From assembly GCA_048772705.1 (NCBI GenBank), contig JBLWGC010000043.1, positions 372,001-436,000 on the forward strand: a stretch of 64,000 bases of DNA, in the 5' to 3' direction. Under the pieces are notes generated by a model. The model searched no databases. It was given only the letters and a program-made list of their open reading frames with translations, and was not told where the DNA came from. The stretch comes from Leidyana gryllorum EB-2025a (lineage: Eukaryota > Protista > Apicomplexa). Both the position numbers and the translations under genes were made by a program. Below, piece after piece: positions 32,501 to 38,500 of the stretch; positions within the stretch are counted from its first letter, which is position 1, and every line of letters begins with the position of its first letter.

Positions 32501-35500
32501 AATGGTGCTGGCGCGGCCGTCGGCACAAGACGACTACGTGCCTTGGCTTCAGGCCATAGCGGCCGCCAGTCCGACGGGCAATCGACAAAAGCAATTGGTG
32601 CAAGTAGAAGATTTGACATTGAGTGTAGCCGATCCGTCTGGAGCCGGCAATCGAGTGATCCCCGTTTCGTCTTTGAGGACCACTGCCTCGCGGGTTTTGA
32701 TTCCCAAACTCCGAAATAAGGAGTACAGCACTCGTCCGACCATTGAGGCGCTGTCGGGTTTCACTGAAGCACAACTAGCAGAAGTGCAAGACTTTACCGT
32801 CATACGCGACGGACTGGGCGATGTGGTGTGGCCAGGCTACACTGATGTCCGAGGGCTCGACATTGATCTCATCGTGGACATCACTCAAGGGGCCGTGGAC
32901 GTCTATGGTGCTAAGTGGGAAAAGGAGATGAAGGCTCGAAAAGTTGGAAAGAAGGTTGCTGACCTCACCCCTGAGGAATTGGATTCCATCCCGCTCGAGC
33001 ACCCTACGGTCGGAACTGGACTGAACAAAAAGGCGGTCGTCACCCTTTATAACTGTCTGTAAGTCGATCTAAATGTCACCACTTTGTGTGTCCACAATCC
33101 CCTTCCGCAGTGTCACCTCGGCTGACTATCCGTACCCCGTCTCCTTCTTGGACGTTGTTGAGGCGCTCAAGAGCCATTGCACACAGCTGGGTGCCGAATT
33201 TGTCTCCCTCACTCCGGATTATAAATGGAAGTGAGTTGGCAGAGACGTGTGGGCTCGTTTGGCTAAATGTGTGCTTCTTTTTGACAGGTTCGCGGTTGAG
33301 CACTTCTCTCGGTACGAGTTTCCTCGGCGATATTGGGGTAAGGAGCGGGCCTTGGCGGCGAAAAGGAGGCGACCCCGGCGAATGCAGCTTGATATGAGCT
33401 CACATCTCCTCTGTGAGCGGTTCTCCAAGGCGGAAGGTTTACCCCAAGGCACCCACAAGATGACCAAACTACTCTCGGCTAATCGTGAGCGGTTGGAAAC
33501 AATGCTGGAAATGGCCCAGACTGCTTTCGTGCAGTTACAAAGAATGATGGGCGATGCTCAGAACAAATCAGAGACAGTGAAGAGGTGGATGTCTTCCGGA
33601 GTTGATACCCAACTGGCCCTCAAGCTGCCGGGTGCAGATACTACCGACAAGGATTGGTTACCCCCACCTAATGATTTATGGACCGTCGAAGAGCCCCAAC
33701 AGGGACCCAAAAGAGACTCACGCATACTGCGATTGCTCGATGAGGGAGATACAACAGAACTGTCCGGTGACGGAACGCTCTCACGAGGCGTCCTCCAGCA
33801 TCTAGCCGAACTCATGGCACTCCCACACAGCCGACTCAACAGACTGAGCATCCAGGCACGCATACTGCAGATTGTCAACGCTTTCACCGAACACAAAGTC
33901 GCGGCCTCAGACGACATCGAAGTGTACACCTCAGAGCTGCAATACGGCCTGGCTTTGTTATCACATGGCTCCCGCAAGATGGCTGCCACAACCAAATGGC
34001 TCACTAGACGATGCCTCGAAGAGGCCGAGAAGATATACCCCAATGGCGAGGTCGAACGAGAATCACTCGCCGATAGTTTACGAGCTGCAATGCTTTTCAT
34101 CTTGGCCCAACAGGTAGCCTGTCATACGTCTCAGTAATCCAACTATCGAACACCCTTGCAGGAAGACTGCGCTGCTAATATCCTCATCGGCGAATCCCTG
34201 TCCAACGAGTACACACCCCCGCGTGCGGAGTTAGCTCTGCCTCGCCTGGGCGCTATCGTACAAGCATCCGCTGTCAAGCGACAAGCAATCCCTTCCTTGG
34301 CAGAACAGCTCAAGTCCATTCAATCTGACCCTGCCGCCATGAACGCCTACGACCAATCGGTCTTGGACTTGATGCTTCTTCTGACGGGCCGGATAGACGT
34401 ACGCATGATACTCCGAATGCCCTCATGGCACTTCGTCTTCCAAGCAATCTTGACCTACTCATGTGATGCATCCGGATTGAATTCGCAAACGGATGTTCTC
34501 ATACACACCGAAGTGGTAAGTCATAGGCATCCTTACCTCTCCCTTCCTCCTGAGTCTGGCTCCTGATCACCGGCAAGGTAAGTTGCGCAATGCGCGAAAG
34601 GATATGCACATCCGCGCGTATAAATCTGTGCTCGAGTATCGGCTTTGCACTTAGCGTTGAGCTTTTTGTGCAAGCTCATGTGCACCGATTATGCTCCGAG
34701 GTATCACGCAGCACCCACCGGTTGCACACAGACTGCAATTCTCTCTGCAAATCGGTGCACACGATGTGCATCTCGTGTGCCAAATCCGTGCACACACTTT
34801 GCATCTCGTGTGCCAGTCTCGTGTGCCAATCTCGTGTGCCAATCTCGTGTGCCAATCTCGTGTGCCAATCTCGTGTGCCAGTCTCGTGTGCTAATCTCGT
34901 GTGTCAGTCTCGTTTGTTACTGCCGATCTCGTCTCTCATTCTCGTGTTTGACTTCTGCGTCGTGGTGTAACACGTCACACTCTCGTGTGACTCTCGTGTA
35001 ACACACTCGAGTATCACTCTCCGTGGAAGCCTCTTGTGTGAGTTCTGCTCTTCTCGTGTGCCAAATGGCGTGTGACTCGTGTGTCAGGTGCCCATGTCTC
35101 GTATGTGCCATCTCTCACAGTATGTGCCATCTCTCACAGTGTGTGCCATCTCTCACAGTGTGTGCCAACTCCCGCACTGTGTGTGCCAACTCCCGCACTG
35201 TGTGTGCCAACTCCCGCACTGTGTGTGCCAACTCCCGCACTGTGTGTGCCAACTCCCGCACTGTGTGTGCCAACCCTCACAGTGTGTGCCAAGCCGCACA
35301 GGGTGTGCCAACTCCCGCACTGTGTGTGCCGTCTCTGACCAAGTGTCATTTTGTCGTCACTTCCTCATCTTCCGAGTGGGTTCCCCATTGTCTGGGTTGT
35401 ATTGTTTTGGGCACATCGGTGCTAATCCCTTGTGTCTCTCCGCGCTTCACGGTCCGTTCCTTCACTCCTCTTGTGCTTCAAGTCCTGTTTAATTTCCGCT

Positions 35501-38500
35501 ATCTTGTTGCTTTTCTATGTCGCGTGCAACCCTACATTCGTTTGTGTGTCGGTCCTGTAGTCGGTGGTCACCTTCTCGCTGCTGAGTGGGTGACCTCCCA
35601 GGACGCGCGTCTCTTCTACTTTCGTCGTTCCCCACCCGTGTGCTGTGAGGGTTGTGACAAATGTCGTCGGCCTCGTATTTTACTGGCCCTGTGTCAGCTC
35701 CACTTTTGTGCTTGTCGTTGGTTCACCGATCGTTTGTCTTGTTTGGTATCTGTTGTACCTTATCTTTCACTTCTTACCGCCCTCTCTCACGTGTCTATGG
35801 GCACTTCACGTTTTGAGGTGGCGTCGGTGCTCATGGGACCGTGCCACCAATTGGGAGATGGTGATCGCGAGGCTGAATATCGAGGCTGTTGGCGACTGCG
35901 AAGCTTAAGGTACTGTACATCTCTGGGGCATGAAGACTGACTTTAATGGTGCCGTTTGTGCTTCCCGGCGAATGTTATCGATACGAGAGGACAGCTTGCC
36001 CGTCGTTGGGCGACTCAGGATTTGTGCAAAAGCCATTTTGCACGAATCCATAGCACTAGTCGCCTATGCACCGAGCGTGCACGGCTGGATGCACATTTGA
36101 GGATCAACTATCGTAAATGAGGGGTCTCGAGGAACATGAAGAGGTTGGGAAGTTCTCCATCCCAACGATCTCAATCCTTCGATTGAGTAGCTGGCTCAGC
36201 TTGAAATAAGAAATCGGCACATAATGATGCATCTGGAGACCAATCAAACTTTCTAACGCAAAGAGTCAATGGTGGTGTGTTGGTGACACGAGCCAGAAAT
36301 TGCAAGTGGATTGTGCTGACGGGGGTTCGGTTGTACACTGTGACGATGTAAGAGACAGACGGGCCGCCTGGTTACAAACCTGTGTGATACCCGTGGATGA
36401 GGGCTGGTGGTGGATGAAGGCTCATGGGCCGTCTCTGTCTCTAGGAGGCACAAGACGCGCAGAGAGGCGCATTTGCACACTGCTCATAGTGCCACGCGCA
36501 GACAGCGCACGCCATGCGCACAAGACACATAGTGGGCAAGCAAAAGTATTGCGCGGCTGATGCGCTATGCTAATGGGATAGGTGCATCTCAGTGTCAAGC
36601 ACTCTGCAGATGAGAAGCACAATGATCTGATTATCAGTCTTGTGTGCGCACATTCGGTGCGCTAATGCACCGAGTGCGGGTTGCAAACTGTGATTATATC
36701 ATGCGCAGAACTTGCGTAGAGTTCGCGCAGCATGAAAACTCTGTCGCAAATCCATTGCTCACAGCCGTGCATTTATGCTATGCACTGTGATCCAGACACA
36801 GTGGATCTTGCGTGGAGCCGGTCTAAGATGATCAATCAATACTGTGTCCTGACAAGTTGCTCTGACCTAGGAGGGCAAGTCGATGATTAGGAGCCAGGAC
36901 GTCCAACTTTCTGTTGCCTCTCCCCTATCTTCCCATTTCCCACATTTGCTAATGATTTCTTTGTTTCCAGTTGCGCGAGGCTTTGAGGCAATTCGATAAT
37001 TTGATGCTGATGTTGTCTGAGCTCCCTTCGGATGCGCGGCCACGATGGAGAGACGCATTTCAACGCCACACCCCGTGGGACTTTCTGCTTTTGAAGTAAG
37101 TTGTTTGATGGTTTGGAGTTCGGCAGTATGTGGTTATGACTCTGTTCAGGGTGACGGCAGGTGCAATGACCATTTCAGAGTTCGCTCGAAGTTTGGTCCC
37201 ACCTGTATCGAGTTCTGAACGTGAGAAAGAAGTCGCTCGGTTGGCAGCTTTAACGGGAGTCGTGATTGCGGGGCTGATTGAGACGCAAGCACATCTAAAA
37301 CGTGAGTCGATTAGGTTGTATTCAGATGGTTTGTGTCTTTAAAGAGAGCACTGTCCTGGAGTTTCTTGGCCAATTGGCATCACTATTCGAAAAAGGTAGT
37401 TGGTCCGATCGAAGACGGATCGAAGATCTATGGCGAGGCTGTATGGACTATGCAGTGGACTTACCGTGGAATTACACGGTCATTTGGGAGATAGTATCGG
37501 GGATAGTGTCCGGCAAAGAGGCGGAGAGCACCCTGAACCACGTTCAGACTGCTCTCGGAGAGCACGTGTCCGCAAAAGAGTTGGAGAGTCTGGAGGTCGT
37601 GTGTCTGGGTGGGGGGCGGGAAGGAGTGAGTGATGCCATGGAGGATTTGGTGGGGACGCTCGGTTTCCCTGAAGTGTTTGTGGTAGCGGCGATGGCAAAG
37701 TGCTTAAGCAATAACTCTCTGATGGTGGCACAGCTGTGGTGGGCAGCCTATGTGCGTTGTTCCACTGAGCCACAGGGTTTCGGAGGTCATTCCCCTCATC
37801 GAGAAACTTCGTGGTACCGGACATTGATGCAGAAGTGTCACGCTCCGGGCGAGTTTGTCAAGTCGGCGGGTGGATGTGTGTTGAAAGTTATAGAGTCACT
37901 GACTGTTCGTCCGTCGTCTTATTTGCCGACGTTGGTGAAGAACATATGGAGTCTGTCATTCTGCGACCTGAGTGCTTTGCCGCAGATGGCTCTGACAGTG
38001 CATAATTGCAGCCGTATTGACATGGGGAAGTGGCTGACAGAGACTTTCTTTGACATGCTGACACGTAACTATCTGAACACAGCTTTGCCGTATGACTTGG
38101 TGCAAATTGTGGAGGGAGTAGCGGTCGTTGGTCACGAGAGATTCGCGAGTTTATATTGGATTGACGGCTGTCCGTTTGTGACGAAGGACAGATTCCGGAG
38201 ACGTGGGGTAGACACTTTGAGTGTGGCGGATGTGGAAGAAGACGGAGAGTGGCGGCTGATCTACGAGGAATATTACACCAAAGGGGGAGTTCCTTTGACT
38301 CAGTATTTGGTGTGGATAAAGAATACGCTGAGTCTGATATATTGCGAGCAGACGGAGATGATGGACGCAGATTTGAAGCTGTTGACGGCGGATGGGAAAG
38401 TGGCGTTCGAGAAGCTGGAAGGACAGGCGCGGTTCAGCGAGGCCTATGAGGCGACGAACGCTGCGTTGGATTTGTTGGAGACGCCTGAGAGTGTATCTTT

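What the first reader, a model, noticed from the sequence alone, without database searches (positions are those of the whole stretch)
34516..36970. Giant NUP98-96 intron whose two ends can zip together through a 19-nt RNA helix
Seen: most introns in this window are about 27-55 nt, but this one is 2,455 nt and restores the Nup96 frame exactly. CTGGCTCCTGATCACCGGC (34556-34574, 40 nt after the donor) is complementary to GTCGATGATTAGGAGCCAG (36879-36897, 73 nt before the acceptor): 16 Watson-Crick pairs, 2 G-U pairs and 1 mismatch. The G-U pairs work only on the transcribed + strand. Inference: a long-range RNA clamp loops out about 2.3 kb so that a spliceosome tuned to short introns sees roughly 110 nt. 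This would let an essential gene carry a large cargo.
Basis: partly seen in the sequence, partly recalled or inferred. Interest (0 to 1): 0.85.

Follow-up and report, generated by a model that had tools for sequence, protein, structure and literature searches.

The report
Giant intron clamped by split hairpin
In a gregarine parasite whose introns are mostly about 50 letters long, one old intron of a core nuclear-pore gene has swollen to 2,455 letters, and its two ends can pair up, probably because extra DNA landed in the loop of a small hairpin; similar pairing is known from yeast and Giardia, where the loops are much shorter.

Summary
The intron and helix are real. The genome is a gregarine. 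An orthologue has an intron at the equivalent codon and phase, only 36 nt long, so 34516-36970 is an ancestral intron about 70 times longer here. The 19-nt helix (16 WC, 2 G-U, 1 mismatch) is the best helix among intron window pairs, has P about 3e-4 for a given intron, and pairs at 0.9-1.0 in full-length folding. The G-U strand argument is uninformative (2 versus 1). The arms are single-copy with no outer target-site duplication, so they are not a TIR family. Just inside the 5' arm lies the intron's strongest donor (AAG|GTAAGT, 34578). A 6-nt direct repeat at both inner arm ends (P about 0.02) suggests a 2.3-kb insertion into the loop of a former 40-nt hairpin. Best reading: a zipper-like clamp inherited from that hairpin, possibly with two-step nested splicing. 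No RNA reads or close relatives were available, so function is untested. It misses the strict yeast zipper geometry (94 versus 85 nt or less). The scan's notes report similar stems on other long introns of this genome (unchecked).

The parts
34162..34515 (+). Upstream exon, inside the Nup96 core; ends in phase 0
   Evidence: Matches a Nup96 profile at positions 363-435 of 743 (E 7e-4) and the orthologue L018 (34%, E 1.6e-5)
34516..36970 (+). 2,455-nt GT..AG intron at an ancestral position
   Evidence: Frame restored; orthologous 36-nt intron at L018:13861-13896, same phase, 21 codons after the shared AIL motif; single copy
34516..34521 (+). Outer donor GTAAGT
   Evidence: Donor score 6.1, typical for this genome
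34532..34538 (+). Anti-donor CTTACCT, complementary to either donor
   Evidence: Duplex -9.1 kcal/mol with the outer donor, -10.6 with the inner; function inferred
34556..34574 (+). 5' arm of the long-range helix; also covers a possible 23-nt stop-containing microexon 34555-34577
34572..34577 (+). GGCAAG, left copy of a target-site-like direct repeat
   Evidence: P about 0.02 for this geometry
34578..34583 (+). Inner donor AAG|GTAAGT, 3 nt inside the 5' arm
   Evidence: Score 8.1, highest in the intron and above the 90th percentile of predicted short-intron donors; AGGTAAGT occurs only twice in the 64-kb window
34590..34800 (.). Cluster of TGCAC/GTGCA palindromic motifs, local hairpins
34803..34913 (+). 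13-nt tandem array, 8.5 copies, TCTCGTGTGCCA core
   Evidence: the tandem motif recurs only in a kinesin gene on C133
35101..35330 (+). 19/21-nt tandem array with the same TGTGCCA core
36000..36800 (.). Second TGCAC-rich, hairpin-rich block; purine-rich half of the intron
   Evidence: folds about equally well on both strands
36857..36878 (+). 7-bp hairpin abutting the 3' arm; its loop holds a weak inner branch/acceptor (CTGAC, TAG at 36870)
   Evidence: Core pair probability 0.9-0.98; acceptor score 0.3
36874..36879 (+). GGCAAG, right copy of the direct repeat; ends in an AG that could close the inner unit
   Evidence: acceptor score -2.0, weak
36879..36897 (+). 3' arm of the long-range helix
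36949..36970 (+). Presumed branch CTAAT (A at 36952), pyrimidine tract and CAG acceptor
   Evidence: Sequence; branch assignment inferred
36971..37095 (+). Downstream Nup96 exon
   Evidence: Open in phase 0; its 3' intron (37096, phase 2 after LL) has a counterpart at L018:13974; last exon matches L018 (E 3e-8)

Best explanation
34516-36970 is an ancestral short spliceosomal intron of NUP98-96 that grew to 2.45 kb (shown by orthology). Its pre-mRNA can form a 19-nt helix that loops out 2.3 kb and leaves about 113 nt between donor and acceptor (predicted). The arms most likely began as a local 40-nt intronic hairpin; about 2.3 kb was inserted into its loop, leaving a 6-nt duplication (inferred). 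The insertion was tolerated because the old stem still closes around it and brings donor and branch region together, as a zipper stem does (inferred, untested). The spliceosome then joins 34515 to 36971, either directly or after first using the inner donor.
For: Same intron position and phase, 36 nt long, in a related gregarine; two neighbouring intron positions also correspond. The upstream exon ends inside the Nup96 core and the gene is single-copy. Helix P about 3e-4, pair probability 0.9-1.0 in the full 2.5-kb fold, about -12 kcal/mol net after opening local structure, before loop cost. Whole-intron fold is about 4 SD below local shuffles. Removing the insert plus one GGCAAG copy leaves a tight hairpin. 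Precedent: PMC12350175 and PMC6679479.
Against: No RNA runs were listed and no close relative exists for covariation. The residual 113 nt is about twice the usual intron, and the donor-to-branch linker of 94 nt exceeds the yeast limit of 85. The antisense strand also folds about 3.4 SD below its shuffles, so the structure is not strand-specific. With the 5' arm shuffled (one replicate) the ends still pair through other stems. The repeat footprint is only P about 0.02 and was found post hoc. A small, unvalidated set of 75-700-nt predicted introns showed no general excess folding. [quoted passage not shown]
Confidence: 0.5

Rival explanations
1. Nested two-step splicing. The helix holds an inner GT..AG unit (34578 to 36870 or 36879) in its loop; that unit is removed first, leaving a 153-162-nt outer intron with a hairpin, which is removed second. 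A variant uses AAG|GT at 34577/34578 as a zero-length recursive site. All routes give the same mRNA. This is compatible with the clamp.
For: The inner donor is the strongest in the intron and sits 3 nt inside the arm, leaving the U1-pairing region free (P about 0.004 for a GTRAGT within 12 nt). Its opening cost falls from 7.3 to 3.9 kcal/mol once the arm is occupied. A donor carried by the insert plus an AG from the duplicated site is a known introner layout.
Against: All inner acceptors score weakly (0.3, -1.4, -2.0, against a median of 3.5). The TAG sits in a stable hairpin loop. The scoring matrices come from unvalidated gene calls.
Confidence: 0.2
2. The helix is a neutral relic (a split hairpin or the last copy of a dead inverted-repeat element) or chance, and the intron is spliced without needing it.
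For: Three transition differences between the arms are what neutral decay would give; no strand asymmetry. With tens of long introns in the genome, P 3e-4 each gives a chance expectation of roughly 1-3% (inference). Other stems also bring the ends together in the model.
Against: The arms are still 16 of 19 Watson-Crick while the insert has no recognisable relative in the genome, which suggests maintenance. No arm family and no outer target-site duplication.
Confidence: 0.2
3. Poison-microexon control. 34516-34554 is a normal-looking 39-nt intron, 34555-34577 a 23-nt exon with an in-frame stop, and the helix hides that exon so that full-length Nup96 is made only when the helix forms. This could tune Nup98 against Nup96.
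For: The ab initio model picked the 39-nt intron; pyrimidine tract 19 of 20; the 5' arm covers 19 of the 23 nt; inclusion gives a stop after three codons. Precedent for structure-controlled poison exons: PMC10789245.
Against: The acceptor is GAG, whereas the other NUP98-96 introns called end in CAG. In the model, taking the arm into the helix makes this acceptor and the inner donor more open, not less.
Confidence: 0.07
4. Split transcription. The inner unit holds a terminator and a promoter, so the two halves are transcribed apart and joined in trans through the arms, as in Giardia split introns; or the locus is two genes or a misassembly.
For: Mirror-image pyrimidine/purine composition. TGCACCGA occurs 4 times where about 0.05 is expected; GTGCAC-type words are ApiAP2 motifs in Plasmodium (PMC11417369). 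Intron pairing is proposed as the step before fragmentation (PMC6679479).
Against: The halves are adjacent, colinear and on one strand; the orthologue is one gene; the break lies inside the Nup96 core; the downstream exon has no start codon of its own.
Confidence: 0.03

Closest known systems
Yeast zipper stems (RPS17B and others; PMC12350175)
   Same: An intronic stem between the donor and the branch point that shortens a long intron; starts 10 nt or more from the donor and ends 20 nt or more from the branch.
   Different: Linker of 94 nt against the defined 42-85; loop of 2.3 kb against long introns mostly of 400-500 nt; a strong second donor just inside the arm; no probing data here.
Base-paired long cis-introns of Giardia, Spironucleus and Trichomonas (PMC6679479)
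   Same: A compact parasite genome with short introns in which a long intron folds to bring its splice sites close.
   Different: There the folded span equals the short-intron length (25-45 nt); here 113 nt remain against about 50. The intron is far longer and the lineage (Apicomplexa) unrelated.
Introners with a carried 5' site and a 3' site taken from the target-site duplication (10.1101/2022.06.06.494994, Fig. 2C)
   Same: The inner unit starts with a perfect donor after an AG-ending duplicated hexamer, ends at the second copy, and has no TIR of its own.
   Different: Single copy, 2.3 kb, and inside an existing intron rather than an exon; splicing of the inner unit is not shown.
Nested, recursive and twin introns (PMC5126111; stwintron abstracts)
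   Same: An internal donor, and an AG|GT junction, inside a long intron.
   Different: The inner unit does not interrupt the outer donor, branch or acceptor, so it is not a stwintron; only 62 nt precede the AG|GT site; the inner acceptors are weak.

Membership tests
Spliceosomal intron at an ancestral position | GT..AG ends, frame restored, position shared with an orthologue | tested here: met
Spliceosomal intron at an ancestral position | Junction reads 34515/36971 | not testable with these tools
   No run was listed, so read laying had no input
Yeast-type zipper stem | Stem of 6 bp or more, 10 nt or more from the donor, 20 nt or more from the branch | tested here: met
   18 pairs, 40 nt and 54 nt away; branch position inferred
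Yeast-type zipper stem | Total linker 42-85 nt | tested here: not met
   40 + 54 = 94 nt with the branch at 36952 (definition)
Yeast-type zipper stem | Forms in vivo and promotes splicing | not testable with these tools
   Needs chemical probing and mutants
Giardia/Trichomonas-type folded long intron | Folded span equals the organism's short-intron length | tested here: not met
   113 nt against 46-57 nt for neighbouring introns; further small stems could shorten it
TIR DNA transposon or MITE with the arms as TIRs | Other copies bounded by the same arms | tested here: not met
   No other hit within 2 mismatches of the 19-mer; 14-mer hits at about chance level; insert single-copy
TIR DNA transposon or MITE with the arms as TIRs | Target-site duplication outside the arms | tested here: not met
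   The flanks differ; none among the direct repeats
Introner | Multi-copy family | tested here: not met
Introner | Splice site carried at the end, other site from the duplication | tested here: inconclusive
   Layout present, P about 0.02, acceptor weak
Stwintron | Inner intron interrupts the outer donor, branch or acceptor | tested here: not met
   The outer signals are intact in the sequence
Intron-hosted known RNA or protein gene | Rfam or Pfam match, or coding signal | tested here: not met
   the 305-codon ORF is within chance (P 0.11)

The most novel reading that the evidence does not exclude
An introner-like 2.3-kb element landed in the loop of an intronic hairpin and is removed as an intron within an intron: the old stem clamps the RNA, exposes the inner donor and orders two splicing steps. 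This would be a structure-gated route by which short-intron genomes take up kilobase insertions in core genes, and a possible stage on the way to split, trans-spliced introns.
Probability: 0.15. Interest if true: 0.75.

Novelty: new variant of a known kind. Interest (0 to 1): 0.47.

Why it matters
If the clamp is functional, it extends structure-assisted splicing of long introns to Apicomplexa (my literature search found no such report) and to a loop several times longer than the yeast and diplomonad cases. It would also give a concrete origin for such stems: an existing hairpin that lets an insertion survive. The ancestral state (36 nt) is known from an orthologue, so the locus is a clean test case. 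It is one locus without RNA data, and the principle is established elsewhere.

Tried and rejected
Sequencing runs: none was listed, so no reads were laid. The ferlin element noted by the scan could not be located. Synteny through the neighbouring GluRS gene failed. Pfam Nup96 did not match the exons; a profile built from fetched homologues matched only the upstream exon. The self-trained gene finder overfits and is unreliable for long introns. Rejected: TIR transposon family; long degenerate inverted repeat (z 2.1 or lower); relic duplication of the flanking exons; Helitron or solo LTR (no matching ends by eye); hidden protein gene; known RNA family; the G-U strand argument. Other short direct repeats near the ends (7-8 nt) were not used, because nine repeats of 6 nt or more were seen where about five are expected. 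The spliced model was searched exon by exon only; the joined search was left out.
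Full report
Setting. The window is contig C43:372001-436000 of a 15.5-Mb assembly. The neighbouring glutamyl-tRNA synthetase is closest to Gregarina sp. and Blabericola proteins at 58-59% identity, so the organism is a gregarine apicomplexan with no close relative in the databases. The gene has FG repeats and the S59 autopeptidase, followed by HFS and a Nup96 part. It is single-copy.

The intron is real. Donor 34516 and acceptor 36970 join two open frames in phase 0. 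The exon before it matches a Nup96 profile at positions 363-435 of 743, so the protein has to continue. A Logan contig of another gregarine (L018) is colinear with the exons on both sides and has only about 465 nt where this genome has 2.9 kb. It carries a 36-nt intron 21 codons after the shared AIL motif, in phase 0, as here. The introns on either side also correspond. This is strong evidence for an old intron that is about 70 times longer here. Junction reads could not be checked because no run was listed. All searches were made exon by exon; the joined model was not searched.

The helix. The pairing is as described, -29.8 kcal/mol. A pairing this good between the two 120-nt ends occurs in 2.7e-4 of shuffles and 3.7e-4 of random genomic pairs, and it is the best of 595 window pairs inside the intron. 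A gapped duplex energy over the same ends is not significant; the signal is the contiguous stem. In the full 2.5-kb ensemble its pairs have probability 0.9-1.0. Opening local structure costs 7.9 + 9.5 kcal/mol, leaving about -12 before the loop cost. The whole intron folds at -871 against about -817 for local shuffles and about -830 for shuffles that keep 4-mers. The antisense strand also beats its shuffles by about 3.4 SD, so this excess is not strand-specific.

Not a TIR family. The intron has no other copy (the tool warns that counts of repeats are lower bounds). The arms have no other match within two mismatches, and no duplication flanks them. There is no long degenerate inverted repeat and no relic exon copy. 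The interior holds two minisatellites with a TGTGCCA core, two blocks rich in TGCAC words, and a pyrimidine-rich then purine-rich composition. It has no Rfam, tRNA, Pfam or coding signal. The cargo is therefore unidentified.

What lies inside the arms. Three bases inside the 5' arm is AAG|GTAAGT (34578), the best donor in the intron. GGCAAG occurs at 34572-77 and again at 36874-79. Removing the insert plus one copy leaves a hairpin of about 40 nt with a short loop; this geometry arises in 2.2% of shuffles. The simplest history is therefore: short intron, then a local hairpin, then a 2.3-kb insertion into its loop. An insert that carries the donor and ends at an AG of the duplicated site is a described introner layout, but this element is single-copy and its possible acceptors are weak. 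I noted the inner donor and acceptor before seeing that the scan had also listed an inner GT..AG unit. The 5' arm also overlaps a possible 23-nt stop-containing microexon behind a GAG acceptor. A CTTACCT element can pair with either donor.

Mechanism. Shown: intron position and expansion, arm complementarity above chance, single copy, inner donor. Predicted: helix formation and a 113-nt residual span. Inferred: origin by insertion into a hairpin loop, and a role in bringing the splice sites together. I put the clamp at 0.5, nested two-step splicing at 0.2 (compatible with the clamp), neutral relic or chance at 0.2, poison exon at 0.07, and split transcription or misassembly at 0.03.

Comparison. 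It works like a yeast zipper stem (PMC12350175) or the folded long introns of Giardia, Spironucleus and Trichomonas (PMC6679479). It fails one defining measure of each: linker 94 nt against 42-85, and folded span 113 nt against about 50. It is not filed as an introner, stwintron or TIR element. A search for an apicomplexan precedent found none. Notes of the scan suggest that many longer introns of this genome are folded; my small, unvalidated sample did not show this, and the genome-wide test could not be run.

Verdict. This is a new variant of a known kind; interest 0.47.

Noticed in passing
L002:1466-1629 (minus strand; G000:C133 near 153150-153250): A probable 164-nt kinesin intron carries tandem copies of the same TCTCGTGTGCCA word on its sense strand, the only other such array found in the genome, and has a short stem joining its ends; overall fold not above shuffles and boundaries unverified.
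   Followed up: partly
G000 genome-wide, including C216:5002-16060 and C43:547670-550589: At least 42 U1-like loci with a wide range of scores (40-69 bits), including a tandem array on C216; suggests a diversified U1 family.
   Followed up: no
window 34681-36673: TGCACCGA occurs 4 times in the intron where about 0.05 is expected; GTGCAC-type words are ApiAP2 binding motifs in Plasmodium, so the insert may hold a DNA-level regulatory cluster.
   Followed up: partly
window 34532-34538: CTTACCT resembles the U1 5' end (from my own knowledge) and can pair with either donor; it could order their use.
   Followed up: partly
window 35023-35940 +: 305-codon Cys/Val-rich ORF across the repeats; no Pfam match, non-coding score, length within chance.
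   Followed up: yes
L020-L039 (G000:C43:1-200000): Largely tRNA-like gene arrays and repeats with many long inverted duplications.
   Followed up: no
L017 / P0126: A Nup98-96 record labelled as the fly Condylostylus ranks among the gregarine hits; probably parasite DNA in the host assembly (inference). It appears to lack an intron at this position.
   Followed up: no
window 34581-34588 and 36969-36976: An 8-nt direct repeat (AGTTGCGC) links the start of the inner unit with the true acceptor-exon boundary; unexplained, possibly chance.
   Followed up: partly
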